From Octopus bimaculoides (lineage: Eukaryota): a stretch of DNA of 40,568 bases. The DNA lies in NCBI RefSeq assembly GCF_001194135.2, contig NC_069003.1:7166979-7207546 (forward strand), written 5' to 3'. Every line of letters begins with the position of its first letter. Within the stretch, counting starts at the first letter, position 1. This document shows positions 12,454 to 38,186 of the stretch, piece after piece. The notes below the pieces were generated by a model. The model worked only from the letters and a program-made list of their open reading frames with translations. It had not been told where the DNA came from and did no database searches. The translations under genes and the position numbers were made by a program.

Positions 12454-12626
12454 TATTATTAGTAGTAGTAGCAGCATAAGCAGCAATAGTAATAGTAGTC
12501 ACTGTAGATGGGGTCTTTGATTTCACTGAACCAATCAAGAATGTAGATTTAAAGTTGTTAGTATTTGTCAGAGAAGCAGAAGTTTCAATAGTAGACAGCA
12601 ATGAATAGAAAAGTGAATTTGTTACA

Positions 12627-14644: not shown

Positions 14645-14970
14645 ATTTGGTACAAGACCAACAATGTCCCCCTCCCCTCTCAAAGGATGTTTGTCTTGCA
14701 AGTTACTTGGTGACCATGTGAAAAGCATCCAGTCCACACTGTAAAGTGGTTGGGTGTTTGGAAGGACATCCAACGGTGAAACCTGTCTGTGCTGGTGCCA
14801 TGTAAAAAGCACTCAATCCACTCTGTGGGATGGTTGGTGTCAGGAAGAGCACCCAGCCATAAAACCCATACCAAAACAGACAGTGAAATATGGTGCAGTC
14901 TTCTGCCTAGCCAGCTCCTGTCAAATCATGTAACCCATGCCAGCATGGAAAGCAGACATTAAATGATAAT
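14645..14970 (+). mobile_element. Family A SINE-like copy with internal duplication
   Basis: AAAAGCA..CA.TCCAC.CTG...GTGGTTGG.GT..GGAAG occurs twice; ends CCATGCCAGCATGGAAAGCAGACATTAAATGAT. Confidence 0.7.
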
Positions 14971-16450: not shown

Positions 16451-16846
16451 GTTCATGCTGCTAAATTGTCAATGAAATGCAGGCGACTGACCGGATGGAT
16501 TCTTAGGACTTTTAGAACAAGAGATCAGGAAACCATGATGGTGCTCTGGAAGACACTTGTTCTAAGCCACTTTGACTATTGCTCTCAGCTATGGTCACCA
16601 ACCAGTGTCAAATTAATCTCAGAACTTGAGGCAATCCAACGAAGCTACACGAAGAAGATAGCCTCTATGCAGCATATAAGCTATTGAGAAAGACTCAAGA
16701 GATTAAGACTCTATTCCTTAGAGCGTAGACGAGAAAGATATGCCATAATATACATCTGGAAGATCCTCGAAGGAGTTGTTCCAAACTTTTGCATCAAAAG
16801 TTACACACATAAAAGAACTGGACGCCATTGCATAGTGCCAAGGACT
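16451..16846 (+). mobile_element. CR1/L2-clade non-LTR retrotransposon ORF2 fragment, C-terminal to the RT core, with one premature stop
   Basis: A single frame reads VHAAKLSMKCRRLTGWILRTFRTRD..KTLVLSHFDYCSQLWSP..LEAIQRSYTKKI..ISY*ERLKRLRLYSLERRRERYAIIYIWKILEGVVPN. The EYC/DYC-x2-WSP and ERL-x2-L-x-LYSLERRR motifs are typical of CR1/L2 ORF2. Both ends run into N gaps. Confidence 0.85.
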
Positions 16847-19800
16847 NNNNNNNNNNNNNNNNNNNNNNNNNNNNNNNNNNNNNNNNNNNNNNNNNNNNNN
16901 NNNNNNNNNNNNNNNNNNNNNNNNNNNNNNNNNNNNNNNNNNNNNNATGAACAAACGAACGAACGTATGTACATGCGAACGAACGTACACACAAACAAAC
17001 GAACTTACGTACAAAGGACCGAACGAACGAAATGAACAAACGAACGAAAGAACAAACGAACGTACGTACGAAGGACCTTTCGTACATACACACGAACGAA
17101 CGATCGAGCGAACGAACGATCGAGCGAACGAACGAAAGTACATACGTACGTACGCACGAACGAACGAATGTGCGAAAGAACGGACGAACGAACGTACGCA
17201 CGAACGAATGATCGAACGACGTAAGTAAGTACGAACGAACGTACCTTATTCCGTGCGTAAGAACGAACGAGCGTACGAACGACAGAACGAAAGTGCATAC
17301 GGACGTACAAACGAACGAACGAATGAACGTAAATGCGTACGTACAAACGAACGAACGAACGAACGTAATGTACGTACGCACGTACGAACGAAGGAACGTA
17401 CCTTACGTCTGTACGTACAAACGAACGAACGTCCGTATTACGAACGATCGAACCTGCGTACGTACGTGCAAACGAACGAACGGATGAACAAACGAACGAA
17501 TGAACGATCGAACTCAGATACGTACCTACGTACGTACGAACGAATTAACGAACGTAATTACACGAAGGAACGAACGAACGAAGGAAAGAACGAACGAGCG
17601 CACAAAAGAACGTACAAACGAAAAAAATTACGTACAAACGAACGAACGTAAGTACGTACGTTCGTTCATTCGTTCGTCCGTACATTCCTTCGTTCGTTTG
17701 TATGTACGTACGTTCGTTTGTTCCTTCNNNNNNNNNNNNNNNNNNNNNNNNNNNNNNNNNNNNNNNNNNNNNNNNNNNNNNNNNNNNNNNNNNNNNNNNN
17801 NNNNNNNNNNNNNNNNNNNNNNNNNNNNNNNNNNNNNNNNNNNNNNNNNNNNNNNNNNNNNNNNNNNNNNNNNNNNNNNNNNNNNNNNNNNNNNNNNNNN
17901 NNNNNNNNNNNNNNNNNNNNNNNNNNNNNNNNNNNNNNNNNNNNNNNNNNNNNNNNNNNNNNNNNNNNNNNNNNNNNNNNNNNNNNNNNNNNNNNNNNNN
18001 NNNNNNNNNNNNNNNNNNNNNNNNNNNNNNNNNNNNNNNNNNNNNNNNNNNNTCGATCGTTCATTCCTTCTTAAGTTCGTACTTACGTGCGTTCGTTCAT
18101 TTGTTCGTCCGTTCGTTTGCACGTACGTACGCAGGTTCGTTCGTTCTTTCGTTTGTTCGTTCGTACGGACGGACACAAGGTACGTTCCTTCTTTCGATTG
18201 TTAGTACGTACTTATGTAAGTACGTTCGGTCATTCGTTCGTTTGTACGTAAGCTTTTTTCGTTTGTACTTCTTTTGTGCGCTCGTTCGTTCGTACTTACG
18301 TTCATTAATTCGCTCGTACGTTACGTTCGTTCGTACGCACGTATCTGAGTTCGTTCGTTCGATCGTTCATTCCTTCTTAAGTTCGTACTTACGTGCGTTC
18401 GTTCATTTGTTCGTCCGTTCGTTTGCACGTACGTACGCAGGTTCGATCGTTCGTAATAAGGACGTACGTTCGTTCGTTCGTTTGTACGTACGGACATAAG
18501 GTACGTTCCTTCGTTCGTACGTCCGTTCTTCCGTTCGATCGTTTGTACGTACGTACGTACGTTCATTCGTTCGTTCGATCGATCGTACGTACGTACGTAC
18601 ATTCGTTCGTTTGTTTGTACGTACGGACGCACTTTCGTTCGTTCGTTCTTACAGACGGACATAAGTTACGTTCGTTCGTTCGTACTTACTTACGTAAATA
18701 CGTACGTACGTTCGGTCGTTTGATCATTCGTTCTTTCGTACATACGAACGAAAGAACGAACGAATGAACGAGTGCACAAAAGAACGAACGCACGAGCGTG
18801 CAATCGAACGAACGAACGTAAGTACGTACGAACGAACGAACAAACTAACGAATGAACGAACGAAAGTACGTAGGTACGTAAGTACGAACGAACGATCGAC
18901 CGAACGAACGAAAGTACATACGTACGTACGCACGAACGAACGTACGAAAGAACGAACGAATGAATGAACGAACGTACGAACGAATGATCGAACGTACGTA
19001 CGTAAGTACGAACGAAAGTACATACGTACGTACGCACAAACGAACGAAAGAAGGAATGAANNNNNNNNNNATTTACATAAGTAAGTACGAACGAACGAAA
19101 GTGCGTACGTACGTACAAACGAACGAATGAACGTACGTACAAACGAACGAACAATCGAACGAAAGAACGTACGTACGTGCGAACTAACGAACGAACATAC
19201 GTGCAAACGTACTTACGAACGATCGAATGAAGGAACGTACCTTATGTCCGTACGTACAAACGAACGAACGAACGTCCGTATTACGGACGATCGAACCTGC
19301 GTACGTACGTGCAAACGAACGAACGTATGTACGTACGTACGAACGGACGAACAAATAAACGAACGTACGTAAATACGAACGAATGAACGAACGAACTCAG
19401 ACACGCACCTACGTACGTGCGTTAGTTCGTTGGTTCGTATGTATCTTCGTTCGTTTGTACTTGCGCAATTACATACGTACGTAACAACGTACGTTCTTTC
19501 GTTCGTAGGTACGTACGAAAGGTCGTTCGTTCGAATGTTCCTACGTACTTCCGTTCGTTCGTTCGTACATACGTACGTACGTTCTTGTGTATGTACGAAA
19601 GATCGTTCGTTCGAATGTTCGTACGTACGTACATACGTACGTTTGCTTTATCTTTCGTTCGTTTGTACGTAAGTTTTTTTCGTTCGTACGTTGTTTTGTG
19701 CGCTCGTTCATTCGTTTGTACTTACGTTCGTTAATTCGTTAGTACGTTCTTACGTTCGTTCGATCGTTCATAAGTTCGTTCACACGTACGTACGCAGGTT

Positions 19801-22800
19801 CGATCGTTCGTAATACGGACGTATGTTCCTTCGTTCGTTTGTACGTATGGACATAAGGTACGTTCGTACGTACGTGCTTAGGTAAGTACGTACGTTCGTT
19901 CGTTCGTACGTACATTTGCACGTACGTTCGTTCGTTAGTTCGTACGTTTTTTCGTTCGATCGTGTGTACGTAGGTACGTATCTGAGTTCGTTCGTTNNNN
20001 NNNNNNCGTTAGTTCGTACGTTTTTTCGTTCGATCGTGTGTACGTAGGTACGTATCTGAGTTCGTTCGTTTGCACGTACGTACGCAGGTTCGATCATTCG
20101 TAATACGGACGTACGTTCGTACAAACGTACGTACGCACGAACGAACGAATGTGCGAAAGAATGGACGAACGAATGAATGAACGAACGTACGCACGAACGA
20201 ATGATCGAACGACGTAAGTACGAACGAACGTACCTTATTCCGTGCGTAAGAACGAACGAGCGTACGAACGACAGAACGAAAGTGCATACGTACGTACAAA
20301 CGAACGAACGAATGAATGAACGTAAATACGTACGTACAAACGATCGAACGGTAGAACGTACGTACGAACTAACGAACGTACGTGCAAACGTACGTACAAA
20401 CGAACGTACTTACATAAGTACGTACGAACGATCGAACGAAGGAACGTACCTTATGTCCGTACGCACAAACGAACGTACGTAAGTACGAACTTACGAACGA
20501 ACGAAAGATTGAACGAGTGTACAAAAGAACGAACGCACGAGCGTACAAACGAACGAACAACGTAAGTACGTACGTACGCACGAATGAACGAATGATTGAA
20601 TGAATGTACGTACGTAAGAACAAAACAAAGAACGAACGAAACGAAGGACGAACGATGGAACGAACGTACGTATGTACGTAGACACGAAATATCGAACGAA
20701 ATAACGAACGATCGAACGAACCAGCGAAACGAACGTCCGTACGTACGTTCGTAAAAAAGAACGAACGTACGTACGAACAAACGAACGAACGTATGCACAT
20801 ACGAACGAACGTACGCACATACGAACGAACGTACGTACAAAGAAACGAACGAACTTACGTACGTAGGTACAAACGAGCGAACGAACGAAAGAAAAAGCAA
20901 ACGAACGTGCGTATGTACGTACGTACGAACGAAAGAACGTACACATGTACGAACGAACGAACGTACGTAAGTATGTACGTTTGAACGAACGAACTAAAGA
21001 ACGAACGAACGAAAGAACGAACGTACGTAGGAACATTCGAACGGACTAACGAAAGAACGTACGTAGTTACGTACGTAAGTACAAACGAACGAAGATACGT
21101 ACGTTCGAATGAACGAAAGAACGGACATACGAACGAACGAACGTAGGTACGAACGATCGAACGAAGGAACGTACCTTATGTCCGTCCGTACAAACAAACG
21201 AACGTAAGAGCGAACAAACGAACGAACGAAATTACGTATATACGAACGATCGAATCTGCATACGTACGTACAAACGAACGAAGGAATGTACGAACGAACG
21301 GATGAACGAACGTTCGTTCGATCGTTCGTACGTACTTAAGTTCATTCGTTCGTTCGTTTGTACGTAAGTTTATTTCGTTCGTAGGTTCTTTTGTGCGCTC
21401 GTTCGTTCTTTCCTTCGTTCGTTAATTCGTTCGTTCGTAAGTTTGTACTTACATACGTTCGTTCTTTTGTTCGTCCGTTCGTTCGTTTGCACGAACCTAC
21501 TCAGGTTCGATCGTTCGTAATACGGACGTACGTTCGTTCGTTTGTACGTACGGACATAAGGTACTTCCTTGCTTCGATCGTTTGCACGTATGTTCGTTCG
21601 TTAGTTCGTACGTTCGTTCGTTTGTACGTACGTACGTTCATTCGATCGTTCGTACGTACATACGTACGCACTTTCGTTCGTTCGTACTTAGGTAAATACG
21701 TACGTACGTTCGGTCGTTCGATCATTCGTTCGATTGTACGTACGTGCGTACGTTCGTTCATTCATTCGTTCGTTCGTTCTTTCGTACATTCGTTCGTTCG
21801 TGTGTACGTACGTATGTACTTTCGTTCGTTCGCTCGATCGTTCGTTCGTACGAACGACGAAACGAACGGACGACCGAACGTAAGNNNNNNNNNNAAGAAC
21901 GTACGAAAGTACAAACGAAAGAAAGTTCGTAAGTAAGAACGATCGAACGAACGTACGTTCGGATGGACGAAAGAACGAACGAACGTACGTACATAAGTCC
22001 ATACGTACGAATGAAAGGATGAACAAACGAACGAACGTATGTACATGCGAACGAACGTACACACAAACGAACGACCTTTCGTACATACACACGAACGAAC
22101 GATCGAGCGAACGAACGAAAGTACATACGTACGCACAAACGAACGAATGTGCGAAAGAACGGACGAACGAATGAATGAACGAACGTACGCACGAACGAAT
22201 GATCGAACGAACGTACCTTATTCCGTGCGTAAGAACGAACGAGCGTATAAAGGACAGAACGAAAGTGCATACGTACGTACAAACGAACGAACAAGCGCAC
22301 AAAAGAACGTACAAACGAACGAACGTATGTACGTACGAACGAACGTACGTACGTTCGTCCGTACATTCCTTCGTTCATTTGTATGTACGTACGTTCGTTT
22401 GTTCCTTCGTTTCGTTCGTTCGTTTTTACGTATGTACGTTCATTCATTCGTTCATTCGTGAGTTCGTTCGATTATTCGTTCGTTCGTTTGTACGCTCGTT
22501 CATTCGTTCGTACATTCTTACGTTCGGTCGTCCGTTCGTTCGTACGTATCTGAGTTCGTTCGCTCGATCGTTCATAAGTTCGTACATACGTACGTTCGTT
22601 CATTCATTCGTCCGTTCGTACGTACATTCGTTCGTTTGTACGTACGTACGCAGGTTCGTTCATTCGTACGTACGGACACAAGGTACGTTCCTTCTTTCGA
22701 TTGTTAGTACGTACTTATGTACGCTCGTTCGTTCGTTCGTACTTACGTTCATTAATTCGCTCGTACGTTACGTTCGTTCGTACGTTCGTTCGCACGCACA

Positions 22801-25800
22801 TATCTGAGTTCGTTCGTTCGATCGTTCATTCCTTCGTAAGTTCGTACTTACGTGCGTTCGTTCATTTGTTCGCCCGTTCGTTTGCACGTACGTACGCAGG
22901 TTCGATCGTTCGTAATTAGGACGTACGTTCGTTTGTACGTACGGACATAAGGTACGTTCCTTCGTTCGTACGTCCGTTCTTCCGTTCGATCGTTTGTACG
23001 TACGTACATTCGATCGATCGTAGTACATTCGTTCGTTTGTTTGTACGTACGTACGCACTTTCGTTCGTTCGTTCTTACACACGGACATAAGTTACGTTCG
23101 TTCGTTCGTACTTACTTACGTAAATACGTCCGTACGTTCGGTCGTTCGATCATTCGTTCGTTCGTACGTACGTTCGTTCTTTCGTACATACGAACGAAAG
23201 AACGAACGAATGAACGAGTGCACAAAAGAACGAACGCACGAGCGTGCAATCGAACGAACGAACGAACGTAAGTACGTACGAACGAACAAACGTACGTAGG
23301 TACGTAAGTACGAACGAACGATCGAGCGAATGAACGAAAGTACATACGTACGTACGCACGAACGAACGTACGAAAGAACGAACGAATGAATGAACGAACG
23401 TACGCACGTACGAACGAACGAATGATCGAACGTACGTAAATAAGTACGAACGAAAGTACATATGTACGTACGCACGAACGAACGAAAGAAGAAATGAATG
23501 AACGGACGTACGCACGTACGAACGAACTAATGATCGAACGACCAAACGTAGTACGCATTTACATAAGTACGAACGAACGAAAGTGCTACGTACGTACAAA
23601 CAAACGAACGAATGTACGTACATACGTAGTTCGAACGAAAGAATGAACGTACGTACAAACGAACGAACAATCGAACGAAAGAACGTACGTACGTGCGAAC
23701 TAACGAACGAACATACGTGCAAACGTACTTACGAACGATCGAATGAAGGAACGTACCTTATGTCCGTACGTACAAACGAACGAACGAACGTCCGTATTAC
23801 GGACGATCGAACCTGCGTACGTACGTTCGTTCCATCGATCGTACGTGCGTACATTCGTTCGTTCTTTTGTACGTACTTACGCACTTTCTTTCGGTCGTTC
23901 GTTCGTTCTTACGCCCGGACATAAGGTACGTTCGTTCGTACTTACTTACGTAAATACGTACGTACGTTCGATCATTCGTACGTACATGCGTACGTACGTT
24001 CATTCATTCTTTCGTACATTCGTACATACGAACGAACGAATGAACGAGTGCACAAAAGAACGAACGCACGAGCGTACAAACGAACGAACGAACTAAANNN
24101 NNNNNNNNNNNNNNNNNNNNNNNNNNNNNNNNNNNNNNNNNNNNNNNNNNNNNNNNNNNNNNNNNNNNNNNNNNNNNNNNNNNNNNNNNNNNNNNNNNNN
24201 NNNNNNNNNNNNNNNNNNNNNNNNNNNNNNNNNNNNNNNNNNNNNNNNNNNNNNNNNNNNNNNNNNNNNNNNNNNNNNNNNNNNNNNNNNNNNNNNNNNN
24301 NNNNNNNNNNNNNNNNNNNNNNNNNNNNNNNNNNNNNNNNNNNNNNNNNNNNNCGAGTGCACAAAAGAACGAACGCACGAGCGTACAAACGAACGAACGA
24401 ACTAAAGAATTAACGTACGTACGAACGAAAGAACGTAGGTACGAACGAACGAACGAAAGAACGTACGTATGTAAGTACGAACGAAGGTACGTACGAAAGT
24501 ACATACGTACGTGCGTACGTACGCACGAACGAAAGAATGATCGAACGACCGAACGTACGTATTTACGTAAGAACGTATTAACGAACGTAAGTATGAAGGA
24601 ACGAACGAACGAGCGCACAAAAGAACGTACGAACGAAAAACTTACGTACAAACGAACGAACGAACGTACATACGTACGTTCGTTCATTCGTACATACGTA
24701 CGTACATTCCTTCGGTCGTTTGTACGAACGTACGCAGATTCGATCGTTCGTACATACGTAATTACGTTCGTTCGCCCTTTCGTTCGTACGTACGGACATA
24801 AGGTACGTTCCTTCGTTCGTTAGTTTGTACGTACGTATGTTCCTTCTTTCGTTCGTTCGATCGCTCGTTCGTTGGTTCGAACGTACGTAGGTACGTATCT
24901 TCGTTCGTTTGTACTTACGTACTTACATGCATACGCAACTACGTACGAAAGTACGTCCGTTCATTCGTTAGTCCGTCCTTTCGTTCGCTCGTTCGTTCAA
25001 ACGTACATACTTACGTACGTACGCACGTTAGCACTTCCGGTCGTTCGTTCGTACATACGTACGTTCTTTCGTTCGTTCGTTCCATCGTTCGTGTGTATGT
25101 ACGAAAGATCTTTCGTTCGAATGTTCGTACGTACGTACGTTCGTTTGCTTTTTCATTCGTTCGTTCGTTCATTTTGTTCGTTCGCTCGTTTGTACGTACG
25201 TAAGTTCGTTCGTTCGTTTTTATGTACGTTTGTTCGTACGTATGGACTTATGTACGAACGAACGAACGATCGAACGAACATACGTACGTACGTTCGTTCG
25301 TCCGTTCATACGTACGTACATTCCTTCGTTCGTTTGTACGTACGTACGCAGATTCGATCGTTCGTACATACGTAATTACGTTCGTTCGTTCGTTTGTACG
25401 TACGGACATAAGGCACGTTCGTTCGTTCTTTCGTTCGTTCGATCGCTCGGTCGTTGGTTCGAACGTACGTAGTTACGTATCTTCGTTCGTATGTACTTAC
25501 GTACTTACATACGTACGTTCTTTCGTTCGTTCGTACGTACGTAAGTACGCCCGTTCATTCGTTAGTACGTCCTTTCGTAGCTACGTACGAAAGATCGTTC
25601 GTTCGAATATTCCTACGTACGTTCGTCCTTTCGTTCGTTCGTTCTTTCGTTCTTACGCACGGACATAAGTTACCTTCGTTCTACTTACTTACGTAAATAC
25701 GTACGTACGTTCGGTCGTTCGATCATTCGTTCGTTCGTTCTTTCGTACATACGAACGAATGAATGAGTGCACAAAAGAACGAACGCACGAGCGTACAATC

Positions 25801-27061
25801 GAACGAACGAACGTCAGTACGTACGAACAAACTAACGAATGAACGTACGTACTAACGAACGAACGAGCAAAAGAACGTACGTAAGTACGAACGAACGATC
25901 GAGCGAACGAACGAAAGTACATACGTACGTACACACGAACGAACGAATGTACGAAAGAACGAACGAACGAATGAATGAACGAACGTACGTACAATCGAAC
26001 GTACCTTATGTCCGTGCGTAAGAACGAACGAACGAACGAAAGTGCGTACGTACGAACGATCGAATGAACGTACGTACGTACAAACGAACGAACATACGTG
26101 CAAACGATCGAACAAAGGAACGTACCTTATGTCCGTACGTACAAACGAACGAACAAACGAACGAAAGAGCGAACGAACGAACGTACGTCCGTATTACGAA
26201 CGATCGAACCTGGGCACGTACTTGCAAATGAACGAACGTACGTAAGTACGNNNNNNNNNNNNNNNNNNNNNNNNNNNNNNNNNNNNNNNNNNNNNNNNNN
26301 NNNNNNNNNNNNNNNNNNNNNNNNNNNNNNNNNNNNNNNNNNNNNNNNNNNNNNNNNAAGAACGAATTAACGAACGAACGAGCGAACGAGCGCACAAAAG
26401 AACGTACGAACGAAATAAACTTACGTACAAACGAACGAACGAATGAACGTAAGTACGTACGAACGATCGAACGAACGTACGTACGTACGTTCGTTCATCC
26501 GTTCGTTCGTACATTCCTTCGTTCGTTTGTACGTACGTATGCAGATTCGATCGTTCGTATATACGTAATTACGTTCGTTCGTTCGCTCTTACGTTCGTTT
26601 GTTTGTACGTACGGACATAAGGTACGTTCCTTCGTTCGATCGTTCGTTCGTACCTACGTTCGTTCGTTCGTACGTACGTTCTTTCGTTCATTCGGTCGCT
26701 CGCTCGAACGTACGTATCTTCGTTCGTTTGTACTTACGTACGTAACTACGTACGTTCTTTCGTTAGTCCGTTCGAATGTTCCTACGTACGTTCGTCCTTT
26801 CATTCGTTCGAACGTACATACTTACGTACGTTCGTACATATGTACGTTCTTTCGTTCGTACGTACGTACATACGCACGTTCGTTTGCTTTTTCTTTCGTT
26901 CGTTCGCTCGTTTGTACCTACGTACGTAAGTTCGTTCGTTCGTTTGTATGTACGTACGTTCGTTCGTATGTGCATACGTTCGTTCGTTTGTTCGTACGTA
27001 CGTTCGTTCGTTCTTTTTTACGAACGTACGTACGGACGTTCGTTTCGTTGGNNNNNNNNNN

Positions 27062-28476
27062 CTTGGTCAGCAGAAATGTATAGAGAGGGACAGAGAAATG
27101 AAGATGAAGGATTATAAGTCTGACGGATAAAGCTATGGTCAGCAGAAATGTATAGAGTTGTACAGAGATGAAGAGAGAAGAATTATAAGTCTGACGGATA
27201 AAGCCATGGTCAGCAGAAATATATAGAGAGGGACAGAGAGAGACGGAATCGTAGTGGCAGACTACCTTGGTCAGTTGGAAGTAGCAGACCTGAAGGAAAT
27301 GAACTTCGTTGTTGGTAAATGTGCTTTTATATTATTTTAGAGAAAAAAGAACTCTGAGTTGTTAACTGTATTGTTAAATGCTTCTAAAAGAAAGGAAAAG
27401 AAAAGAAATACAAAAAGAAAGAAGCAGAAGAACTTTGTTGTCAAATGAAACTTGAGACACGAACTTTGCGATGTAAAAATGATTGGAAAGCTTATAATTG
27501 CTTGGGAACTTTGACAACGTTATTGAACTGTCATGCCATGTATTGGAATTGTTATTATGTAATGCTCTATTCTAATGTTTTAAATGTATTCTGTGATGTT
27601 ATGTACGACAAAAAGAAAAGGTTACCCAACGCATGGTCTTCGTGTTGTTTCTTCCTCCCCGTCCTATTTGCCTGTGTTGTTCGTTACGTGCTCCAGCCGG
27701 GGCTTTATTATCGGTCAGGATTGTACCGACAGACGAATTTTGCTGGCTCACTGAGTGTTGAACGTTCGCGCGTGCGCGAGTCCCCCTTCGGTGTTTAAGG
27801 AGGTGCTTCGCGTGCGGGCGTTCGTAACAATACGTACGTTCGTTCCATCATTCGTCTTTCGTTTCGTTCGTTCTTTCTTTCGTTCTTACGTACGTACATT
27901 CATTCAATCATTCGTTCATTCGTGCGTACGTACGTACTTACGTTTNNNNNNNNNNNNNNNNNNNNNNNNNNNNNNNNNNNNNNNNNNNNNNNNNNNNNNN
28001 NNNNNNNNNNNNNNNNNNNNNNNNNNNNNNNNNNNNNNNNNNNNNNNNNNNNNNNNNNNNNNNNNNNNNNNNNNNNNNNNNNNNNNNNNNNNNNNNNNNN
28101 NNNNNNNNNNNNNNNNNNNNNNNNNNNNNNNNNNNNNNNNNNNNNNNNNNNNGAACTTTGACAACGTTATTGAACTGTCATGCCATGTATTGGAATTGTT
28201 ATTATGTAATGCTCTATTCTAATGTTTTAAATGTATTCTGTGATGTTATGTACGACAAAAAGAAAAGGTTACCCAACGCATGGTCTTCGTGTTGTTTCTT
28301 CCTCCCCGTCCTATTTGCCTGTGTTGTTCGTTACGTGCTCCAGCCGGGGCTTTATTATCGGTCAGGATTGTACCGACAGACGAATTTTGCTGGCTCACTG
28401 AGTGTTGAACGTTCGCGCGTGCGCGAGTCCCCCTTCGGTGTTTAAGGAGGTGCTTCGCGTGCGGGCGTTCGTAACA
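27062..28476. mobile_element. Non-satellite insert, probable LTR (solo LTR or element end); 27506-27945 is probably duplicated by assembly at 28153-28592
   Basis: Ends in ...GTTCGTAACA (TGTTACG on the other strand, an LTR-type terminus) at 27829/28476, then satellite resumes abruptly. No coding domains are seen and the left end is hidden in a 10-N gap. Confidence 0.5.
27064..27275 (+). repeat. Three tandem ~72-bp repeats inside the insert
   Basis: TGGTCAGCAGAAAT(G/A)TATAGAG starts at 27064, 27136 and 27207; a partial TGGTCAG lies at 27268. Confidence 0.85.
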
Positions 28477-31400
28477 ATACGTACGTTCGTTCCATCATTC
28501 GTCTTTCGTTTCGTTCGTTCTTTCTTTCGTTCTTACGTACGTACATTCATTCAATCATTCGTTCATTCGTGCGTACGTACGTACTTACGTTTGTTCGTTC
28601 GTTTGTACGCTCGTTCTTTTGTACACTCGTTCAATCTTTCGTTCGTTCGTAAGTTCGTACTTACGCACGTTCGTTTGTACGTACGTTCCTTCGTTCGATC
28701 GTTCGTTAGTTCGTTAGTTCGTACGTACGTTCTTCCGTTCGATCGTTTGTACGTACGTACGTTCATTCGTTCGTTCGATCGATCGTACGTACATTCGTTC
28801 GTTCGTTTGTACGTACGTACGCACTTTCTTTCGGTCGTTCGTACGCACTTTCGTTCGTTCGTTCTTACGCACGGACATATGGTACGTTCGTTCGTACGTT
28901 CTTACGCACGGATATAAGGTACGTTCGTTCTACTTACTTACGTAAATACGTACGTTCGGTCGTTTGATCATTCGTTCGTTCGTACGTACGAGCGTGCGTT
29001 CGTTCATTCTTTCGTACATACGAACGAAAGAACGAGTGCACAAAAGAACGAACGCACGAGCGTACAAACGAACGAACGTAAGTACATACGAACGAAGGTA
29101 CGTACGTACGTGCGAACGGACGAAAGTACATACGTACGTACGTACGTACGCACGAACTAACGAACGAATGTACGAAAGAACGAACGAACGAATGAATGAA
29201 CGAACGAACGCACGTACGAACGACCGAACGTATTTACGTAAGTTCGAACGAACGAACGTACATTATGTCCGTGCGTAAGAACGAACGAAAGTGCGTACTT
29301 ACGTACAAACGAACGAACGAATGTTCGAACGAAGGAACGTACCTTATGTCCGTACGTACAAACGAACGAACGAACGAACGTACGTCCGTATTACGAACGA
29401 TCGAACCTGCGTACGTACGTGCAAACGAACGAATGGACGAACAAATGAACGATCGAACTCAGATACGTACCTACGTACACACGATCGAACGAAAAAACGT
29501 ACGAACTAACGAACGAACGTACGTGCAAATGTACGTACGAACGAACGAACGTACGTACTTACGCAAGCACGTACGTACGAACGTACCTTATGTCCATACG
29601 TACAAACGAACGAAGGAACATACGTCCGTATTACGAACGATCGAACCTGCGTACGTACGTGTGAACGAACGGACGAACGAACGTAAGTACGAACTTACGA
29701 ACGAATGAACGATCGAACGAACGTACTAACGAGCGTAAGTACAAACGAATGAACGAGCGCACAAAACAACGTACGAACGAAAAAAACTTACGTACAAACG
29801 AACGAACGAACGAACTTACGTACGTTCGTTCGTACACACGTACGTACATTCCTTTGTTCGTTCGTTCGCTCTTTCGTTCGTTTGTACTCACGGACATAAG
29901 GTACGTTCCTTCGTTCGATCGTTCGTACGTATGTACGTTCGTTGGTTCGTACGTACGTAGGTACATATAGTCGTTCGTTTGCACTTACGTACGTACGTAA
30001 CTATGTACCTACGTAACTATGTACGTTCTTTCGTTCGTACGCATGTAAGTACGTCTGTTCATTCGATAGTTCGTCCCTTCGTTCGTTCGTTCCATCGTTC
30101 GTACGTACGTACGAAAGATTGTTCGTTCGAATGTTCCTACGTACGTTCGTCCTTTCGTTCGTTCGAACGTACATACTTACGTACGTACACACGTTCGTAC
30201 TTTCGTTCGTACATACATACGTAAGAACGTACGTTCTTTCGTTCGTTCGTATGTATGTACGAAAGATCGTTCGTACGAATGTTCGTACGTACGTACATAC
30301 GCACGTTCGTTTGCATTTTTCTTGTTCGTTCGTTCGTCCTTCGTTTCGTTTCGTTCGTTCTTTCTTACGTTCTTACGTACATTCAGTCGTTCGTTCGTTC
30401 GTGCGTACGTACGTTCGTTCGTACATTCTTACGTTCGGTCGTCCGATCGTTCTCTCGTTAGTTCGTTCGTACGTACGTATCTGAGTTCGTTCGTTCGTAA
30501 GTTCGTACATACGTACGCTCGTTCGTTTGTACGTACGTACGCAGGTTCGTTCGTCATTTCGTTTGGTCGTTCGTTCGTTTGTACGTACGGACACAAGGTA
30601 CGTTCCTTCGTTCGATCGATCGTGTGTACGTAAGTTTTTTTCATTCGTACGTTCTTTTGTGCGCTCGTTCGTTCGTTCTTTCCTTTCTTCGTACTTACGT
30701 TCATTAATTCGTTCGTACGTATCTGAGTTCGTTCGTTCGATCGTAAGTTCGTTCATTTGTTCGTCCGTTTGTTCGTACGTATGTACCTACGTTCGTTCGT
30801 TTGCACGTACGTACGCAGGTTCGATCGTTCGTAATACGGACGTACGTTCGTTAGTTCGTACGTACGCTCTTCCGTTCGATCGTTTGTACGCACGTACGTA
30901 CGTTCATTCGTTCGTTCGTTCGATCGATCGTACGTACGTACATCCGTTCGTTCGTTTGTACGTTCGTACGCACTTTCGTTCGTTTGTTCTTACGCACGGA
31001 CATAAGTTACGTTCGTTCGTACTTACGTAAATACGTACGTACGTTCGATCAATTGTTCGTTCGTACGTGCGTACGTTCGTTCATTCGTACATACGAACGA
31101 ATGAACGAGTGCACAAAAGAACGAACGCACGAGCGTACAATCGAACGAACGTACGTACGAACGAACAAACTAAGGAATGAACGTACGTACGAACGAACGA
31201 ACGTAGGTACGTACGGACATAAGGTACGTTCCTTCGTTCGATCGTTCGTACTTCCGTAAGTACGTTCGATCGTTCGTACCTACGTACGTTCTTTCGTTCG
31301 TACGTAAGTACGTCCGTTCATTCGTTAGTCCGTCCTTTCGTTCGTTCGTTCGTACGTACGAAAGATCGTTCGTTCGAATGTTCCTACGTACGTTCGTCCT

Positions 31401-34400
31401 TTATTTCGTTCCAGCGTACATACTTACGTACGTACGCACGTTCGTACTTCCGTTCGTTTGTTCGTACATACGTACGTACGTTCTTTCGTTCCATCGCTTG
31501 TGTGTATGTACGAAAGATCGTTCATTCGAATGTTCGTACGTACGTTCGTTTGCTTTTTCTTTCGTTCGTTCGTTCATTCATTCGTTCATTTCGTTCGTTC
31601 GCTCGTTCGTTCGTATGTACATACGTTCGTTCCTTTGTTCGTACGTATGGACTTACGTACGTACGTTCGTTCTTTCTTACGAACGTACGTACGGACGTTC
31701 GTTCGATCGTTCTTACGTACGAACTTTCGTTATTTGGTTCATTCTTTCGATCGTTCGTTTGTTCGTTCGTTCGTTCGCACGTACGTACGCAGGTTCGTTC
31801 GTTCGTACATTCTTACATCCGTTCGTACGTACGTATCTGAGTTCGTTCATTCGTTCGTTCGTACGTACATTCGTTCGTTCGTTTGTACGTACGCAGGTTC
31901 GTTCGTTCGTTTGTACGTACGCAGGTTCGTTCGTTCGTTCGTCCGTCCGTACTTACGTACGTTCATTCGTTCGTTCGTTTGTACGTACGTTCGTTCGTTG
32001 GTACGTACTTATGTTCGTTCATTCGTTCGTTTGTACGTAAGTTTTTTTCGTTCTTACGTTCTTTCGTCCGTTCGTACGTATCTAAGTTCGTACTTACGTA
32101 GGTTCGTTCATTTGTTCGTCCGTTCGTTCGTACGTACGTACATTCGTTCGATCGTTTGCACGTGCGTACGCAGGTTCGATCGTTCGTAATACCGACGTAC
32201 GTTCGTTCGTTTGTACGTACGGACATAAGGTACGTTCCTTCGTTCGATCGTTCGTTCGTTTGTACGTACGCACGTACGTTCATTCGTTCGTCTGATCGTT
32301 CGTACGTACGTACGTACATTCGTTCGTTTGTACGTACGTACGTATGCACGGACATAAGGTACGTTCGTTCGTTCGATCGTTTGTACTTACTTACGTAAAT
32401 ACGTGGTTCGATCATTCGTTCGTTCGTACGTACGTGCGTACGTTCGTTCTTTCGTACATACGAACGAAAGAACGAACGAGTGAACGAACGAACGTAAGTA
32501 CGTACGAATGAACGTACGAACGAATGAACGTACGTACGTAAGAACGAACGACCGAACGAACAAAAGGAAGGACGAACGTACTACGTACGAACGATCGAAC
32601 GAACGTACGAAAGAATGAATGAACGAACGAACGAAAGAATGAACGAATAACGAACGAAAGTTCGTACGTAAGAACAATCAAACGAACGAGCGAAACGAAC
32701 GAACGAACAAAGGAACGAACGAACGAACGTGAATAAGTCCATACGTACGAGCAAATGAAGGAACAAACGAACGAACGTATGTACATACGAACGAACGAAG
32801 GAACAAACGAACGAACGAACATACGTACATACAAACGAACGGACGAACTTACGTACCTAAGTACAAACGAGCGAACGAACGAAATGAACGAACGAACGAA
32901 AGAAAAAGCAAACGAACGTACGTATGTATGTACGTAAGAACATTCGAACGAATGATCTTTCGTACATACACACGAACGATGGAACGAACGATCGAACGAA
33001 CGGACGGAAGTACGAACTTACGAACGAATGAACGATCGAACAAACGAACGAACGAACGCACGTAAGTACATACGAACGAAGGAACAAAAGAACGAACGAA
33101 CGAAAGAACAAGCGTACAAAACACACGAACGAAAGAAGGTACGTACATACGAACAAACGGAAGAACCAACTAACGAATGAACGGACGTACGTAAGAAAGA
33201 ACGAACGAAAGAACGTACGTACGTACGTACGAACGAACGTACGTATGTACGGACGTACGAATGAACGAACGAACGTACGTACGTCCGAAAAAACGAATGA
33301 TCGAACGAACAAACGAATGAACGTTTGTACGTACGTACGTCTGGACCCAGGAACAAACGTACGTACGTACGAACGATTGAACGAAGAAACGAACGTTCGT
33401 ACGTAAGAACAATCGAACGAACGAGCGAAATTTCCTACGTACGTACGAACGAGCGAAATTCCCTACGTACGTACGAACGAACGAACGTACGTACGTTCGT
33501 CCGTACGTACATGCGTGCGGGTGGATGAAAGAACGAACGAACGTACGTACGTACATGCGTACGGATGGATGAAAGAACGAACGAACGTACATAAGCCATT
33601 AAGTACGAACAAACGAACGTACGTACATACGAACGAACTTCCGTACGTACGAAGGAGCGAACGAACAAAATGACCGAACGAACGAACGTACGTACGAACA
33701 AACGAACGTACGTACGTACTTACGTACGTATGTACGAACAAACGGAAGAACGATCTTTCGTACGTACGTACGAACGATGGAACGAACGAAAGAACGAACT
33801 AACGAATGAACGGACGTACTTACGTACGTACGAACGAAGGAACAAACGAACGAAAATCGTACGTAGGTACGTAAGTTCAAACGAACGAACGAACGAACGA
33901 AAGTACATACGAACGTACGAACGAACGTAGGTACGAACGAACGAAAAAACGTACGTTCGTAAGAACGAACAACCGAACGTACGTTCGTACTTACGTAAGT
34001 ACGTACGGACTTATGTAAGTACGTACGTACGAACGATCGAACGAAGGAACGTACCGTATGTACGTACGTACAAACGAACGATCGAACGAACAAACGAACG
34101 AAAGAGCGAACAAACGAACGATCGAACCTTCGTACGTGCGTACAAATGAACGAACGAATGTACGTACGAACTAACGGACAAACAAATGAACGAACGTACG
34201 TAAGTACGAACTTACGAACGAACGAACGAATTAACGAACGTAAGTACGAAGGAAGGAACGAACGAACGAGCGCACAAAAGAACGTACGAACGAAAAAAAC
34301 ATACGTACAAACGAACGAACGATCTAACGAACGTACGTACGTACTTACGTACGTACGAACGATCGAATGAACAAACGTACCTTGTGTCCGTACGTACAAA

Positions 34401-37400
34401 CGAACGAACCTGCGTACGTACGTGCAAACGAACGAACGAATGTACGTACGGACGAACGAATGAACGAACGTACGTAAGTACGAACTTACGAACGAATAAA
34501 CGATCGAACTCAGATACGTACGTACGTACGAACGAAGAAAGGAACGGACGACCGAACGTAAGAACGTACGAACGAAATAACGAAAGTTCGTAAGTGAGAA
34601 CGATCGAACGAATAAACGAACGTACGTACGTTCGGACGGACGAAAGAACGAACGTACGTACATTAAGTCCATACGTACGAATGAACGGAGGAACAAACGA
34701 ACGAACGTATGTACATTCGAACGAACGAACGTATGTACATACAAACGAACTTACGTACGTATGTACAAAGGAGCGAACGAACGAAATGTACGAATGAATG
34801 AACGAACGAAAGAACAAACAAACGAACATTCGAACGAACGATCTTTCGTACATACACACGAACGATGGAACGAACGAACAATCTAACGAATGAACGTACG
34901 TACCAACGAACGAACGAAAGAACGTACGTACGTAAGTACGAACGAAGGTACGTACGTATGAACGAACGAACGAAAGTACATACGTACGTACGTACGCACG
35001 AACGAATGAATGAACGAATGACCAAACGTACGTACGTATTTACGTAAGTACGAACGAACGAACGTACTTTATGTCCGTGCGTAAGAACGAACGAACGACA
35101 GTGCGTACGTACGAACGATCGAACGAATGAACGTACGTACACACGATCGAACGAAAGAACGTACGAACTAACGAACGTACGTACTTACGTAAGCACGTAC
35201 GTACGAACGAAGGAACGTACCTTATGTCCATACGTACAAACGAACGAACGAAAAAAGGAACGAACGAAGGAACATACGTCCGTATTACGAACGATCGAAC
35301 TTGCGTACGTACGTGTGAACGAACGAACGTAAGTACGAACTTACGAACGAACGAATGAACGAGCGCACAAAACAACGTACGAACGAAAAAAACTTACGTA
35401 CAAACGAACGAACGAACGTAAGTACGAACGAACGAACGTACATTCCTTTGTTCGTTTGTACGTACGTACGCAGATTCGATCGTTCGTAATTACGTTCGTT
35501 CGTTCGTTTGTTCGCTCTTTCGTTCGCTTGTTCGTACGGACATAAGGTACGTTCCTTCGTTCGATCGTTCGTACGTACGTATGTTCTTTCGTTCGTTCGA
35601 TCGCTCGTTCGTTGGTTCGTACGTACGTATCTTCGTTCGTTTGCACTTACGTACGTACGTAACTATGTACGTTCTTTCGTTCGTACGTATGTAAGTACGT
35701 CTGTTCATTCGTTAGTTCGTCCTTTCGTTCGTTCGTTCCATCGTTCGTACGTACGTACAAAAGATCGTTCGTTCGAATATTCCTACGTACGTTCGTCCTT
35801 TCGTTCGTTTGTTCGTTCGAATGTTCGTACGTACGTTTGCTTTTTCTTTCGTTCGTTCGTTCGTTCATTCATTCGTTCGTTTGCACGTACGTACATAAGT
35901 TCGTTCGTTCGTTTGTATGTACGTACGTTCGTTCGTTCGTATGTACATACGTTCGTTCCTTTGTTCCTCCGTTTGTTCGTACGTATGGACTTATGCACGT
36001 ACGTTCCTTCGTTCTATCGTCCGTCCGAACGTACGTTCGTTCGTTCGTTCTTACGAACGTATGTACAGACGTTCGTTCGATCGTACTTACGTACGAACAC
36101 TCGTTCTTTCGTGTGTTATTTCGTTCATTGTTTCGTAGGTTCGTTCGTTCGGAGGTACGTACGTTCGATATTTCGTGTCTACGTACATACGTACGTACGT
36201 TCGTTCGTTCGTCCTTCGTTTCGTTCGTTCGTTCTTACGTACGTTCATTCATTCGTTCATTCGTTCGTACGTACTTACGTTCGTTTGTACGCTCGTGCGT
36301 TCGTTCTTTTGTGCACTCATTCATTCGGTCGTATGTACAAATTTCGGAAAGAACGAACGAACGAATGAATGAATGAACGAACTTACGCACGTACGTACGA
36401 ACGAACGAATGATCGAACGACCGAACGTACGTACGTATTTACGTAAGTATGAACGATCGAACGAACGAATGCACCTTATGTCCGTGCGTAAAAACGAACG
36501 AACGAACGACCGAATGAAAGTGCGTACGTACGTACAAACGAACGAACGAATGTACGTACGAACGATCGAACGAACGAATGAACGTACGTACGTGCAAACG
36601 AACAAGCGATCGATCGAAAGAACGTACGTACGAACTAACGAACGAACGTATGTGCAAACGTACGTACGAACGATCGAACGTACCTTATATCCGTACGTAC
36701 AAACGAACGAACGAAAAAGCGAACAAACGAACGTACGTCCGTATTACGAACGATCGAACCTGCGTACGTACGTGCAAACGAACGAACGAATGTACGTACG
36801 TACGTACGAACGGACGGACGAACAAATGAACGAACGTACCTAAGTAAGAACTTACGAACGAATGAACGATCGAACTCAGATACGTACGTACGAACGAACA
36901 AACGGAGGAACGAACGTAAGAACGTACGCACGAATTAAAGAACGTAAGTACGAAGGAACGAGCGAACGAACGAAGGAAAGAACAAACGAACGAACGAGCG
37001 CACAAAAGAACGTACGAACGAAAAAAACGTACTTACGAACGAACGAACGAAGGAACGTACCTTGTGTCCGTACGTACAAACGAACGAAAGAGCGAACAAA
37101 CGAACATACGTATGTACGAACGACCAAACGAACGAACGAACCTGCGTACGTACGTACAAACGAACGAACGAATGTACGTACGTACGAACGAACGCACGAA
37201 CGAATGAACGAACGAACAAACGAACGAAAGCACGAACAAAAGAACGTACGTACGTATGTACGAACGACCGAACGAACGAACCTGCGTAGGTACGTATAAA
37301 TGAACGAACGAATGTACGCACGTAAGTACGAACGAACTAACGAACGAGTGTACAAAAGAACGAACGCACGAGCATACAAACGAACGAACGAAAGTACGTA

Positions 37401-38133
37401 AGAACGAACGAACGAAAGTACGTAAGAACGAACGAACGTACCTTGTGTCCGTACGTACAAACGAACGAACGAACGAAAGAACGAACAAACGAACGTACGT
37501 ATGTACGAACGAACCTGCGTACGTACAAACGAACGAACGAACGTACGAACGAAAGCACGAACAAACGAACCTGCGTACGTACGTACAAATGAACGAACGA
37601 ATGTACGAACGAACTAACGAACGAATGAACGAGTGTACAAAAGAACGAACGCACGAGCGTACAAACGAACGAACGAATGAACATAAGTACGTACGAACGA
37701 ACGAACGTACATATGTACGTTGGTTCGTACATACGTACGTTCTTTCTTTCGTTCGTTCGCTCCTTCGTACGTAAGTTCGTTCGTATGTACGTACGTTCGT
37801 TTCTTCGTTCGTTCGCGCGTACTTAAGGACTTATGTACGTACGTTCGTTCGTACGTACGTATGTACGTTCTTTCGTACGGACTAACGTACGTCCATACGT
37901 ACGAACGAACGAACATACGTAGGAACGTACATACGTACGGATGGATGAAAGAACGAACGAAGTCCTTAAGTACGAGCAAACGAACGAACAAACGAACTTA
38001 CGTACGAAGGAGCGAACGAACGTACGTCCGTTCATTCGTTAGTTCGTTTGTACGTACCTTCTTTCGTTCGTTTGTTCTTTTGTACGCTCGTTCTTTCCTT
38101 TCTTCATTTGTGCGTACTCCGTTCGTTCACACG

Positions 38134-38186
38134 TAAATATAAATAAATATATATATATATATATTTAAATATATATATATATATAT
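38134..38186. repeat. (TA)n-rich run within or at the edge of the satellite
   Basis: Directly visible, followed by an N gap. Confidence 0.85.

What the first reader, a model, noticed from the sequence alone, without database searches (positions are those of the whole stretch)
17598..36350. Array polarity flips ~26 times, repeatedly at the same two conserved junctions: a fold-back higher-order unit
Seen: AACG-rich and CGTT-rich blocks alternate, with switches near 17655, 18740, 19415, 20120, 21311, 21850, 22350, 23188, 23822, 24026, 24674, 25253, 25288, 25749, 26485, 29017, 29822, 31090, 31208, 32458, 35440, 36345, 37712, 37885, 38022 and 40085. Many T-to-A switches use GTTCTTTCGT-ACATACGA-ACGAAAGAAC, itself a 10-bp hairpin (18730, 23176, 32446; variants at 24006, 25737, 29006, 31082; inverted at ~36310-36350). 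Many A-to-T switches follow the GAGCGCACAAAAGAACG module and precede GTACATTCCTT (17598, 22296, 24610, 26388, 29757, 35361). The same modules flank the junction in mirror order. Inference: the amplified unit is a kb-scale imperfect palindrome, unlike ordinary head-to-tail satellites. This suggests replication fold-back or template switching at self-complementary ACGT/GATC tetramers, and potential cruciform or hairpin formation.
Basis: partly seen in the sequence, partly recalled or inferred. Interest (0 to 1): 0.8.

Follow-up and report, generated by a model that had tools for sequence, protein, structure and literature searches.

The report
Satellite array with alternating strand orientation
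A 23-kb repeat array in what looks like an octopus draft genome really does switch strand about 26 times at a few recurring junctions, but this is a known kind of satellite architecture, not evidence of repeated fold-back events, and it still needs long-read confirmation.

Summary
From 16947 to the window end the sequence is a degenerate (AACG)n-based satellite. All visible switches lie inside contigs, not at gaps.

Eight T-to-A switches share one junction (J1), eight A-to-T switches share another (J2), and two share a third (J3). Eight are singletons.

CGTT blocks are true inverted copies of an ordered ~300-bp unit. Landmark strand matches block polarity 140/143, and landmark order is mirrored.

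The fold-back reading is not supported:
- The two arms at a switch are no more alike than random pieces of the array.
- Perfect inverted repeats are at most 15 bp.
- ACGT and GATC are not enriched at switches.
- Junctions are no better conserved than other landmarks.

Best explanation: a few old inversion or inverted-duplication breakpoints inside a tandem array, later spread by amplification of a roughly 1.8-2 kb composite unit and reshuffled.

Closest known: Tribolium satellites with inversely oriented subarrays and recurrent inversion sites.

Caveat: this is a gapped draft. Three gaps are spurious contig overlaps, and no independent reads or assemblies could be reached.

The parts
16947..27051 (.). 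Satellite array, first part: degenerate (AACG)n/(CGTT)n blocks of alternating polarity. It starts right after gap 16847-16946.
27062..27820 (+). Non-satellite insert of about 760 bp, including a 71-bp x2.5 tandem repeat at 27064-27239. The inverted paralogue at 20678-20721 has about 42 bp of satellite instead (the empty site). The left border abuts a 10-N gap.
27821..40568 (.). Satellite array, second part; it runs off the window end. It includes the gap-free contig 28153-38186, which holds 11 switches.
18626..18811 (+). J1 junction copy (T-to-A switch at 18736; exact 28-mer hairpin at 18730-18757)
23072..23257 (+). J1 copy (switch at 23182)
23910..24095 (+). J1 copy (switch at 24020; variant with an internal CGTACAT duplication)
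25633..25818 (+). J1 copy (switch at 25743)
28902..29087 (+). J1 copy (switch at 29012)
30975..31160 (+). J1 copy (switch at 31085). Its stem carries a double change, T>A on the left and A>T on the right, that keeps 10/10 pairing.
32342..32527 (+). J1 copy (switch at 32452). The right flank has diverged and lacks the GAGTGCACAAAAGAACGAACGCACGAGCGT module.
36268..36453 (-). J1 copy in reverse orientation (switch at 36343); the hairpin stem is lost.
17596..17690 (+). J2 junction copy (A-to-T switch at 17658): GAGCGCACAAAAGAACG ... switch ... GTACATTCCTT
21281..21400 (-). J2 copy in reverse orientation (switch at 21309); 91% identical to the 26474 copy over 285 bp.
22293..22371 (+). J2 copy (switch at 22342)
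24611..24712 (+). J2 copy (switch at 24663)
25235..25326 (+). Partial J2 copy: a 42-bp A island (25235-25276) followed by the J2 right arm with GTACATTCCTT at 25316.
26388..26519 (+). J2 copy (switch at 26474; 14-bp perfect palindrome GAACGAACGTACGTACGTACGTTCGTTC)
29755..29854 (+). J2 copy (switch at 29812)
35361..35448 (+). J2 copy (switch at 35435)
19260..19543 (+). J3 junction (A-to-T switch at 19393). It lies inside a 1.1-kb segment (18920-19996) that recurs inverted at 39467-40568 with 86% identity.
39924..40231 (-). J3 copy in reverse orientation (switch at 40072)
19933..20070 (+). Exact 64-bp duplicate on both sides of the 10-N gap 19997-20006: an unmerged contig overlap, i.e. an assembly artefact.
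24045..24406 (+). Exact 53-bp duplicate on both sides of gap 24098-24353: an unmerged contig overlap.
27506..28592 (+). Exact 440-bp duplicate on both sides of gap 27946-28152: an unmerged contig overlap.

Best explanation
This is a genuine but old and heterogeneous satellite DNA of an octopod-like animal genome. Its base layer is a degenerate AACG tetramer (CpGs spaced 4 bp apart in 62% of cases). Above that sits an ordered composite unit of roughly 300 bp, recognisable by landmark modules in the order D-H-F-E-B. The array is built of sub-arrays of this unit in alternating orientation (median 657 bp, range 42-2983 bp). They abut directly, with no foreign sequence between them.

Shown: the orientation changes are real inversions of the same ordered unit. 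Most use two junction types in which a truncated unit is followed by a reverse-oriented unit truncated at a different position.

Inferred: one or a few inversion or inverted-duplication events inside a head-to-tail array created J1 and J2. A composite segment of about 1.8-2 kb (J1, A arm, J2, T arm) was then amplified by unequal exchange or segmental duplication. Later recombination between oppositely oriented sub-arrays flipped segments, giving the reverse-oriented copies of J1, J2 and J3 and the extra singleton junctions. No function is required. Hairpins could form in single-stranded DNA, but that is only a thermodynamic prediction.
For: - Polarity blocks and switch positions.
- Landmark strand agrees with block polarity 140/143. 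Cyclic order D>H>F>E>B holds 43:8 in A blocks and is reversed 46:7 in T blocks.
- A spacing of about 306 bp shows up in k-mer distances and in a direct repeat, 18053-18196 vs 18359-18517.
- J1 is shared by 8 switches and J2 by 8, with HSPs of 80-91% identity over 130-290 bp spanning the switch. J3 is shared by 2 at 86% over 300 bp.
- Inverted paralogues of 0.1-1.1 kb at 86-96% identity span junctions.
- J1 and J2 alternate along the array.
- Modules on either side of J1 and J2 also occur in uninverted contexts, which locates the breakpoints.
- All switches lie inside contigs. The longest perfect inverted repeat at any switch has a 15-bp arm. In 20 of 26 switches, no junction-spanning 51-mer recurs elsewhere in the window.
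Against: - There is no read-level or independent-assembly confirmation. The scaffold is a gapped draft with three demonstrably spurious gaps.
- Copies of the composite unit are only about 73-80% identical overall, barely above the roughly 70% background between any two pieces. Unit length varies: J2-J2 spacings are about 1.8, 1.9 (corrected), 2.3 and 5.6 kb.
- Left- and right-flank similarities among junction copies are uncorrelated (Mantel r=0.01 and -0.31). That fits recombination, chimeric assembly or alignment noise equally well.
- Eight junctions are singletons.
- TRF finds no clean long period, and ungapped autocorrelation shows only period 4.
Confidence: 0.62

Rival explanations
1. Assembly artefact: many or most flips are mis-joins or chimeras made by a short-read assembler or gap closer in a low-complexity repeat rich in self-complementary ACGT runs. 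The true locus would be head-to-tail.
For: - The scaffold is a draft with 14 gaps, and three have exact flank duplications.
- Reverse-complementing a contig with an odd number of flips leaves its end polarities unchanged, so polarity continuity at gaps does not verify orientation for most contigs here.
- A 186-bp patch of 100% identity (19125-19310 = 23641-23826) ends exactly where the singleton flip at 23809 begins.
- The flip at 21846 is 38 bp from a contig end, and an inverted paralogy stops there.
- Left and right flank similarities of junction copies are uncorrelated.
Against: - Every visible flip is inside a contig.
- Perfect inverted repeats at flips have arms of 15 bp or less, far below usual k-mer and read lengths. 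A classic assembler fold-back would give long perfect palindromes.
- Most junction-spanning 31- and 51-mers are unique in the window.
- J1, J2 and J3 recur as diverged copies (73-91%) with indels, and kb-scale inverted paralogues at 86-96% identity span junctions. Independent mis-joins would not reproduce that.
- Several gaps are bridged collinearly by paralogues or exact overlaps.
Confidence: 0.18
2. One reading: about 26 recurrent replication fold-back or template-switch events at a hairpin hotspot and at ACGT/GATC tetramers, each creating a local imperfect palindrome.
For: J1 folds as a 9-15 bp stem with an 8-nt loop in most copies, and J2 has 10-14 bp palindromes (z about -4 to -5). GTAC lies within 10 bp of 21/26 switches against 60% of random positions. 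Single-stranded DNA across a flip folds into a long imperfect hairpin (-264 kcal/mol for 800 nt, z=-12.8).
Against: - Arms at each switch are no more similar than random array pieces.
- Adjacent blocks are not closest relatives.
- ACGT and GATC are not enriched, and the junction copies are not independent observations.
- Flanks of J1 and J2 are conserved over more than 100 bp on both sides as different modules, which points to copying of an existing junction rather than re-creation.
- Junctions are as diverged as other landmarks (0.73-0.78 vs 0.71-0.75), so they are old.
- One J1 copy has lost the hairpin.
Confidence: 0.08
3. Nested foldback-type transposons whose long terminal inverted repeats are made of tandem sub-repeats. 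In that case the flips would be element centres and element-element boundaries.
For: Blocks of opposite polarity are built of short tandem units, as in FB elements (my own knowledge of the family). A non-satellite 760-bp piece sits inside the array.
Against: - The two arms are not near-identical.
- The sequence at one 'end' (J2 right) is not the reverse complement of the other 'end' (J2 left) beyond generic tetramers.
- There is no unique central domain at J1.
- The 760-bp insert is flanked by the same polarity on both sides.
- No target-site duplications were seen, though I did not search for them systematically.
Confidence: 0.05
4. No inversion at all: polarity drifts in place by point mutation and slippage (CGAA to CGTA to CGTT), because ACGT-type units are self-complementary intermediates.
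For: CGTA is the second commonest unit (584 against 1027 CGAA among CpGs spaced 4 bp apart). Switches often pass through (ACGT)n runs.
Against: Non-tetramer landmarks of 13-22 bp occur on the strand predicted by block polarity 140/143 and in mirrored order. Inverted HSPs of 0.1-1.1 kb at 86-96% identity exist.
Confidence: 0.02

Closest known systems
[quoted passage not shown]
   Same: Arrays change monomer orientation repeatedly. Sub-arrays abut without foreign sequence. [quoted passage not shown] Short hairpins are predicted at the inversion sites.
   Different: - In Tribolium the inversion-site sequences are 95-99.9% identical and the arrays are homogeneous. Here junction copies are 73-91% identical and no better conserved than the rest.
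- Tribolium sub-arrays are several kb to tens of kb and tend toward symmetric pairs. Here blocks have a median of 0.66 kb and the arms are not symmetric.
- Tribolium was verified on HiFi reads and by FISH. Here there is one locus in a gapped draft.
- Different phylum (mollusc vs insect) and unrelated sequence.
Complex satellite monomers made of two inverted subunits: T. brevicornis 1061-bp monomer with two ~470-bp inverted subunits, T. madens MAD2 (704 bp), T. audax TAUD2 (as cited in PMC12581902)
   Same: A kb-scale repeating unit contains both orientations of a shorter ancestral unit, created by inversion and then amplified.
   Different: Those are fixed-length, homogeneous monomers repeated head to tail. 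Here the composite unit varies from about 0.8 to 5.6 kb and copies are 70-80% identical.
Haplochromine cichlid centromeres: four satellite blocks of alternating orientation around a pair of inverted 'centroid' elements (PMC13652916)
   Same: Satellite blocks alternate in orientation within one array.
   Different: In cichlids there are few switches, organised around about 15-kb transposon-like elements. Here there are many switches with no intervening element.
Foldback (FB) transposons (from my own knowledge; not tested against a library)
   Same: Inverted arms are composed of short tandem sub-repeats.
   Different: There are no near-identical arms, defined termini or central domain here.

Membership tests
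Satellite DNA with inversely oriented sub-arrays and recurrent inversion sites (Tribolium type) | Tandem array of a recognisable monomer | tested here: inconclusive
   Period 4 is clear. An ordered unit of about 300 bp is supported by landmark order (43:8 and 46:7) and by 306-bp spacings. Spacing is irregular, however, and TRF finds no clean long period.
Satellite DNA with inversely oriented sub-arrays and recurrent inversion sites (Tribolium type) | Sub-arrays of opposite orientation abut directly, without extraneous sequence | tested here: met
Satellite DNA with inversely oriented sub-arrays and recurrent inversion sites (Tribolium type) | A few recurrent inversion-site types, each a truncated unit followed by a reverse-oriented unit truncated elsewhere | tested here: met
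   J1 x8, J2 x8, J3 x2. Breakpoints were located against uninverted copies of the same modules.
Satellite DNA with inversely oriented sub-arrays and recurrent inversion sites (Tribolium type) | Inversion sites highly conserved (95-99.9% in Tribolium) | tested here: not met
   Mean pairwise identity of junction windows is 0.73-0.78, against 0.71-0.75 for other landmarks.
Satellite DNA with inversely oriented sub-arrays and recurrent inversion sites (Tribolium type) | Dyad symmetry: paired arms of similar sequence and length | tested here: not met
   Arms are no more similar than the background, and block lengths range from 42 to 2983 bp.
Satellite DNA with inversely oriented sub-arrays and recurrent inversion sites (Tribolium type) | Genome-wide abundance, (peri)centromeric location, confirmation on long reads | not testable with these tools
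   No eukaryotic genome or read collection was reachable. Metagenome scans and protein-space searches found nothing related.
Complex satellite monomer with two inverted subunits (T. brevicornis type) | Fixed-length composite monomer repeated head to tail with high homogeneity | tested here: not met
   J2-J2 spacings are 1811, about 1920 (after removing the insert and gap duplicate), 2321 and 5623 bp. Units are about 73-80% identical.
Foldback transposon | Near-identical long terminal inverted repeats with defined ends | tested here: not met
Assembler fold-back (hairpin) chimera | Long perfect palindrome (arms at least as long as the assembly k-mer) centred on the switch, often at a contig end | tested here: not met
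   The longest perfect arm is 15 bp. Switches are internal to contigs, except 21846, which is 38 bp from a contig end.
Tetranucleotide microsatellite (AACG)n | Period-4 tandem repetition | tested here: met
   TRF gives period 4 with 66-71% matches. CpG spacing is 4 bp in 62%, 8 bp in 24% and 12 bp in 8% of cases. It is too degenerate and too structured to be only a microsatellite.

The most novel reading that the evidence does not exclude
Octopod genomes carry a CpG-dense, tetramer-derived satellite whose arrays are systematically built from alternating-orientation sub-arrays joined at a few conserved inversion junctions. That would be the dyad-symmetric satellite organisation so far reported only in Tribolium beetles, arisen independently in a mollusc and possibly marking (peri)centromeric or other heterochromatic domains.
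Probability: 0.2. Interest if true: 0.55.

Novelty: new member of a known kind. Interest (0 to 1): 0.33.

Why it matters
If long reads confirm it, this would be an example outside beetles of a satellite organised by frequent orientation switches at recurrent inversion junctions. A 2026 study states that such organisation has been documented only in Tribolium (PMC13081366). It would show that inversion followed by amplification is a general route of satellite evolution. It would also give cephalopod genomics a marker for a repeat class that short-read assemblies handle badly. On the practical side, the locus illustrates scaffold errors: spurious gaps with duplicated flanks inflate repeat content.

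Tried and rejected
- **Independent copies.** A metagenome scan with a J1-specific pattern found nothing. A looser module pattern gave three unrelated contigs of 54-60% GC.
- **Protein-space search.** A junction-spanning ORF as query returned only unrelated single-polarity microsatellite ORFs from other organisms.
- **Exact ORF look-ups.** Two long satellite ORFs are not on record.
- **Long-period tests.** Ungapped autocorrelation shows only period 4, and spacing of the D landmark is irregular.
- **Mantel test.** Comparing left- and right-flank divergence among junction copies was uninformative. Fixed windows are disturbed by indels.
- **Library scans.** Rfam gave no match. Pfam gave no match on the multi-copy ORF fragment or the insert ORF.
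- **In-place mutational polarity drift.** Rejected.
- **Foldback transposon.** Considered unlikely.
- **Single reciprocal inversion.** I tested whether J1 and J2 are its two ends. One breakpoint pair matches within about 20 bp, but the other is offset by about 90 bp. One clean event is therefore not enough.
- **Special conservation of junctions.** Not found.
- **A first full self-BLAST at stringent scoring timed out** and was replaced by junction-window queries.

Full report
**What the window is.** The window is a gapped draft scaffold with 14 runs of N. Bases 1-16846 are ordinary interspersed-repeat-rich sequence (GC about 37%, CpG observed/expected 0.38).
- A SINE-derived ORF from the flank finds only one protein in the large protein collection, a hypothetical protein of Octopus vulgaris.
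- The SINE DNA is 82-92% identical to that O. vulgaris locus.
- I therefore treat the source as an octopod or close relative. The species itself was not determined.
- A multi-copy ORF fragment at 16451-16846 has hundreds of relatives. The only named ones are decapod hypothetical proteins at 54-56% identity. It looks like the C-terminal part of a LINE ORF2, but that is from memory, and Pfam gave no match.

**Extent of the array.** From 16947 to the end of the window (40568) the sequence is a degenerate AACG-based tandem array. It is interrupted once by about 760 bp of non-satellite sequence (27062-27820). The feature is therefore larger than the finding's coordinates.

**Check of the observation.**
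- About 97-98% of informative tetramers agree with their block (my sum of the counts).
- TRF independently reports period-4 arrays whose consensus flips between GAAC/ACGA and CGTT/TCGT at the same borders.
The 28-mer is exact at 18730, 23176 and 32446, with 1-2 mismatches at 25737, 29006 and 31079.
- GAGCGCACAAAAGAACG is present at the six stated sites.
- GTACATTCCTT occurs exactly eight times, each at an A-to-T switch. Shuffles expect none of these.

**Gaps, tested first as requested.** Polarity is the same on both sides of all six gaps inside the finding, so no listed flip coincides with a gap.

| Gap | Result |
|---|---|
| 17728-18052 | Consistent with the paralogue at 22342-22968 |
| 19061-19070 | Bridged by the gap-free inverted paralogue 39467-40568 |
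| 19997-20006 | Exact 64-bp flank duplicate; contigs overlap, gap spurious |
| 21885-21894 | No support; the flip at 21846, 38 bp away, is the least secure |
| 24098-24353 | Exact 53-bp flank duplicate; contigs overlap, gap spurious |
| 26251-26357 | Bridged collinearly by the inverted paralogue 20721-21851; true size nearer 40 bp than 107 |
| 27946-28152 (outside the flagged list) | Exact 440-bp flank duplicate; contigs overlap, gap spurious |

One caveat applies. Reverse-complementing a contig with an odd number of flips leaves its end polarities unchanged. Polarity continuity therefore verifies orientation for only two of the contigs.

**Are the CGTT blocks real inversions?** A polarity change could in principle arise in place, because CGAA to CGTA to CGTT needs only two substitutions and CGTA is the second commonest unit. 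Two results exclude this.
- Five non-tetramer landmarks (D ACCTTATGTCCGT, H CGTCCGTATTACG, F CCTGCGTACGTACGTGCAAACG, E GAACTCAGATACGT, B GAGCGCACAAAAGAACGTAC) lie on the strand predicted by block polarity in 140 of 143 hits. They follow the cyclic order D>H>F>E>B 43:8 in A blocks and the reverse order 46:7 in T blocks.
- Inverted HSPs of 0.1-1.1 kb at 86-96% identity exist.

There is thus an ordered unit of roughly 300 bp above the tetramer. A 306-bp spacing appears, although the spacing is irregular.

**The junctions.**
- Alignment of the T-to-A switches shows one family, J1, at 18736, 23182, 24020, 25743, 29012, 31085 and 32452, and reverse-oriented at 36343. About 130-190 bp are shared across the switch.
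- The A-to-T switches share J2 at 17658, 22342, 24663, 26474, 29812 and 35435, reverse-oriented at 21309, and partially at 25276.
- J3 occurs at 19393 and reverse-oriented at 40072, inside a 1.1-kb inverted duplicate of 86% identity.
- Copies within a family are 73-91% identical and differ by substitutions and indels.
- Eight switches are singletons or only background-like: 20117, 21846, 23809, 25234, 31200, 37704, 37873 and 38019.
- The two flanks of a junction are different modules, not mirror images. At J1 the left arm ends with TACGTAAATACGT...GATCATTCGTTC, and the right arm begins with GAGTGCACAAAAGAACGAACGCACGAGCGT. Both modules also occur in uninverted contexts, which places the breakpoints.
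- Each junction is a truncated unit followed by a reverse-oriented unit truncated elsewhere. This leaves inverted repeats of 43-145 bp (77-90% identity) offset by 140-250 bp.
- J1 and J2 alternate, with A arms of about 0.65-0.8 kb and T arms of about 0.85-1.3 kb. The J2-J2 spacings are about 1.8, 1.9 (corrected), 2.3 and 5.6 kb.

**Tests of the fold-back idea.**
- The reverse complement of the left 200 bp scores no better against the right 200 bp than random pairs of array pieces do (z from -2.8 to +0.2).
- Adjacent oppositely oriented blocks are not more similar than non-adjacent ones (p=0.80).
- ACGT and GATC are not enriched within 10 bp of switches (58% vs 56%; 12% vs 11%). GTAC is mildly enriched (81% vs 60%), but the junction copies are not independent.
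- Junction windows are no better conserved than other landmarks.
- The J1 stem is perfect in four copies. One of these carries a double change that keeps pairing. The stem is imperfect in two copies, disrupted by a small duplication in one, and lost in one.
- Short hairpins at J1 and J2 fold better than shuffles (z about -4 to -5).
- 800 nt across a flip can fold into a long imperfect hairpin. That follows from AACG/CGTT complementarity in general. With about 70% arm identity, cruciform extrusion from duplex DNA is doubtful; this last point is my own knowledge.

**Artefact or real?**
- Against an artefact: all visible flips lie inside contigs, and eleven lie in one gap-free 10-kb contig. Perfect inverted repeats at flips have arms of at most 15 bp. 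In 20 of 26 switches no junction-spanning 51-mer recurs elsewhere in the window. Diverged multi-copy junctions and kb-scale inverted paralogues are not what independent mis-joins produce.
- For caution: this is a draft with proven scaffold errors. A 186-bp patch of 100% identity ends exactly at the singleton flip at 23809. Flank similarities across junction copies are uncorrelated. No independent data could be reached.
- My view is that the junction types are real, and that the long-range order and copy number are uncertain.

**Mechanism.**
- Shown: the blocks are inversions of an ordered unit, and a few junction types recur.
- Inferred: one or a few inversion or inverted-duplication events occurred in a head-to-tail array. 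A composite unit of about 1.8-2 kb was then amplified. Recombination between oppositely oriented sub-arrays later flipped segments, which accounts for the reverse-oriented J1, J2 and J3 copies.
- J1 and J2 are not the two clean ends of a single inversion. One breakpoint pair matches within about 20 bp, and the other is about 90 bp off.

**Comparison with what is known.** The closest described systems are the Tribolium satellites.
- Their arrays consist of inversely oriented sub-arrays.
[quoted passage not shown] T. madens shows the same (PMC13081366).
- The older complex monomers with inverted subunits, such as T. brevicornis at 1061 bp, are cited there.
- The present array shares the architecture. 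It differs in being far more diverged, in having short asymmetric blocks, and in lacking special conservation of the junctions.
- PMC13081366 states that such organisation had been documented only in Tribolium. Cichlid centromeres show a coarser alternation around transposon-like elements (PMC13652916).

**Verdict.** This is a new member of a known kind, of moderate interest, pending long-read validation.

Noticed in passing
window 19933-20070, 24045-24406, 27506-28592: Three gaps are flanked by exact duplicates of 64, 53 and 440 bp. The neighbouring contigs overlap, so the gaps are spurious and the scaffold is longer than the real sequence. TRF reports one of them as a 74-bp 'tandem repeat'.
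   Followed up: yes
window 27062-27820 (empty site at 20678-20721): A 760-bp non-satellite piece, with a 71-bp x2.5 tandem repeat at 27064-27239, sits inside the array. The inverted paralogue at 20559-21432 has about 42 bp of satellite at the same place. It is either an insertion or a misplaced contig; its left border is a 10-N gap. There is no Pfam match.
   Followed up: partly
window 16947-40568 versus 1-13059: The array is extremely CpG-dense (15.9 CpG per 100 bp, observed/expected 3.2), while the flank is CpG-depleted (1.3 per 100 bp, observed/expected 0.38). Only 44% of lost in-phase CpGs are TG or CA. This raises the question of whether the array escapes methylation.
   Followed up: partly
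window 19125-19310 and 23641-23826: A 186-bp patch of 100% identity lies between two otherwise roughly 75%-identical paralogous regions. It ends exactly where one copy flips strand (23809) and the other continues. This is either recent gene conversion or a collapsed or chimeric assembly.
   Followed up: partly
window 3021-3156 and 3559-3694: A perfect 136-bp inverted repeat flanks about 400 bp of microsatellite-rich sequence, close to gap 2962-2971. It may be a young element with terminal inverted repeats or an assembler fold-back.
   Followed up: no
window 4172-4455, 8181-8398, 9052-9150, 9485-9768, 11506-11804: Several self-complementary stretches of 100-300 bp (81-91% identity) lie in the non-satellite flank. 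They may be hairpin-forming small elements.
   Followed up: no
window 2075-2356, 6409-6583, 12743-12979; also 1008-1226 and 14579-14960: These are copies of SINE-like repeats. One family is 82-92% identical to a locus on Octopus vulgaris chromosome OX597820.1, which is the basis for calling the source an octopod.
   Followed up: partly
window 16451-16846: A fragment of a multi-copy element ORF, probably the LINE ORF2 C-terminal region, is isolated between two gaps immediately before the array starts. One in-frame stop is present. The best named relatives are decapod hypothetical proteins at 54-56% identity.
   Followed up: partly
window 38137-38186: An AT-only low-complexity stretch, including a 40-bp perfect palindrome (38147-38186), ends a contig at gap 38187-38286 inside the array.
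   Followed up: no
protein P0004: Public collections hold many spurious 'proteins' translated from (TTCG/TTCA)n-type microsatellites. One of them carries a source annotation as an ABC-type multidrug transporter.
   Followed up: no
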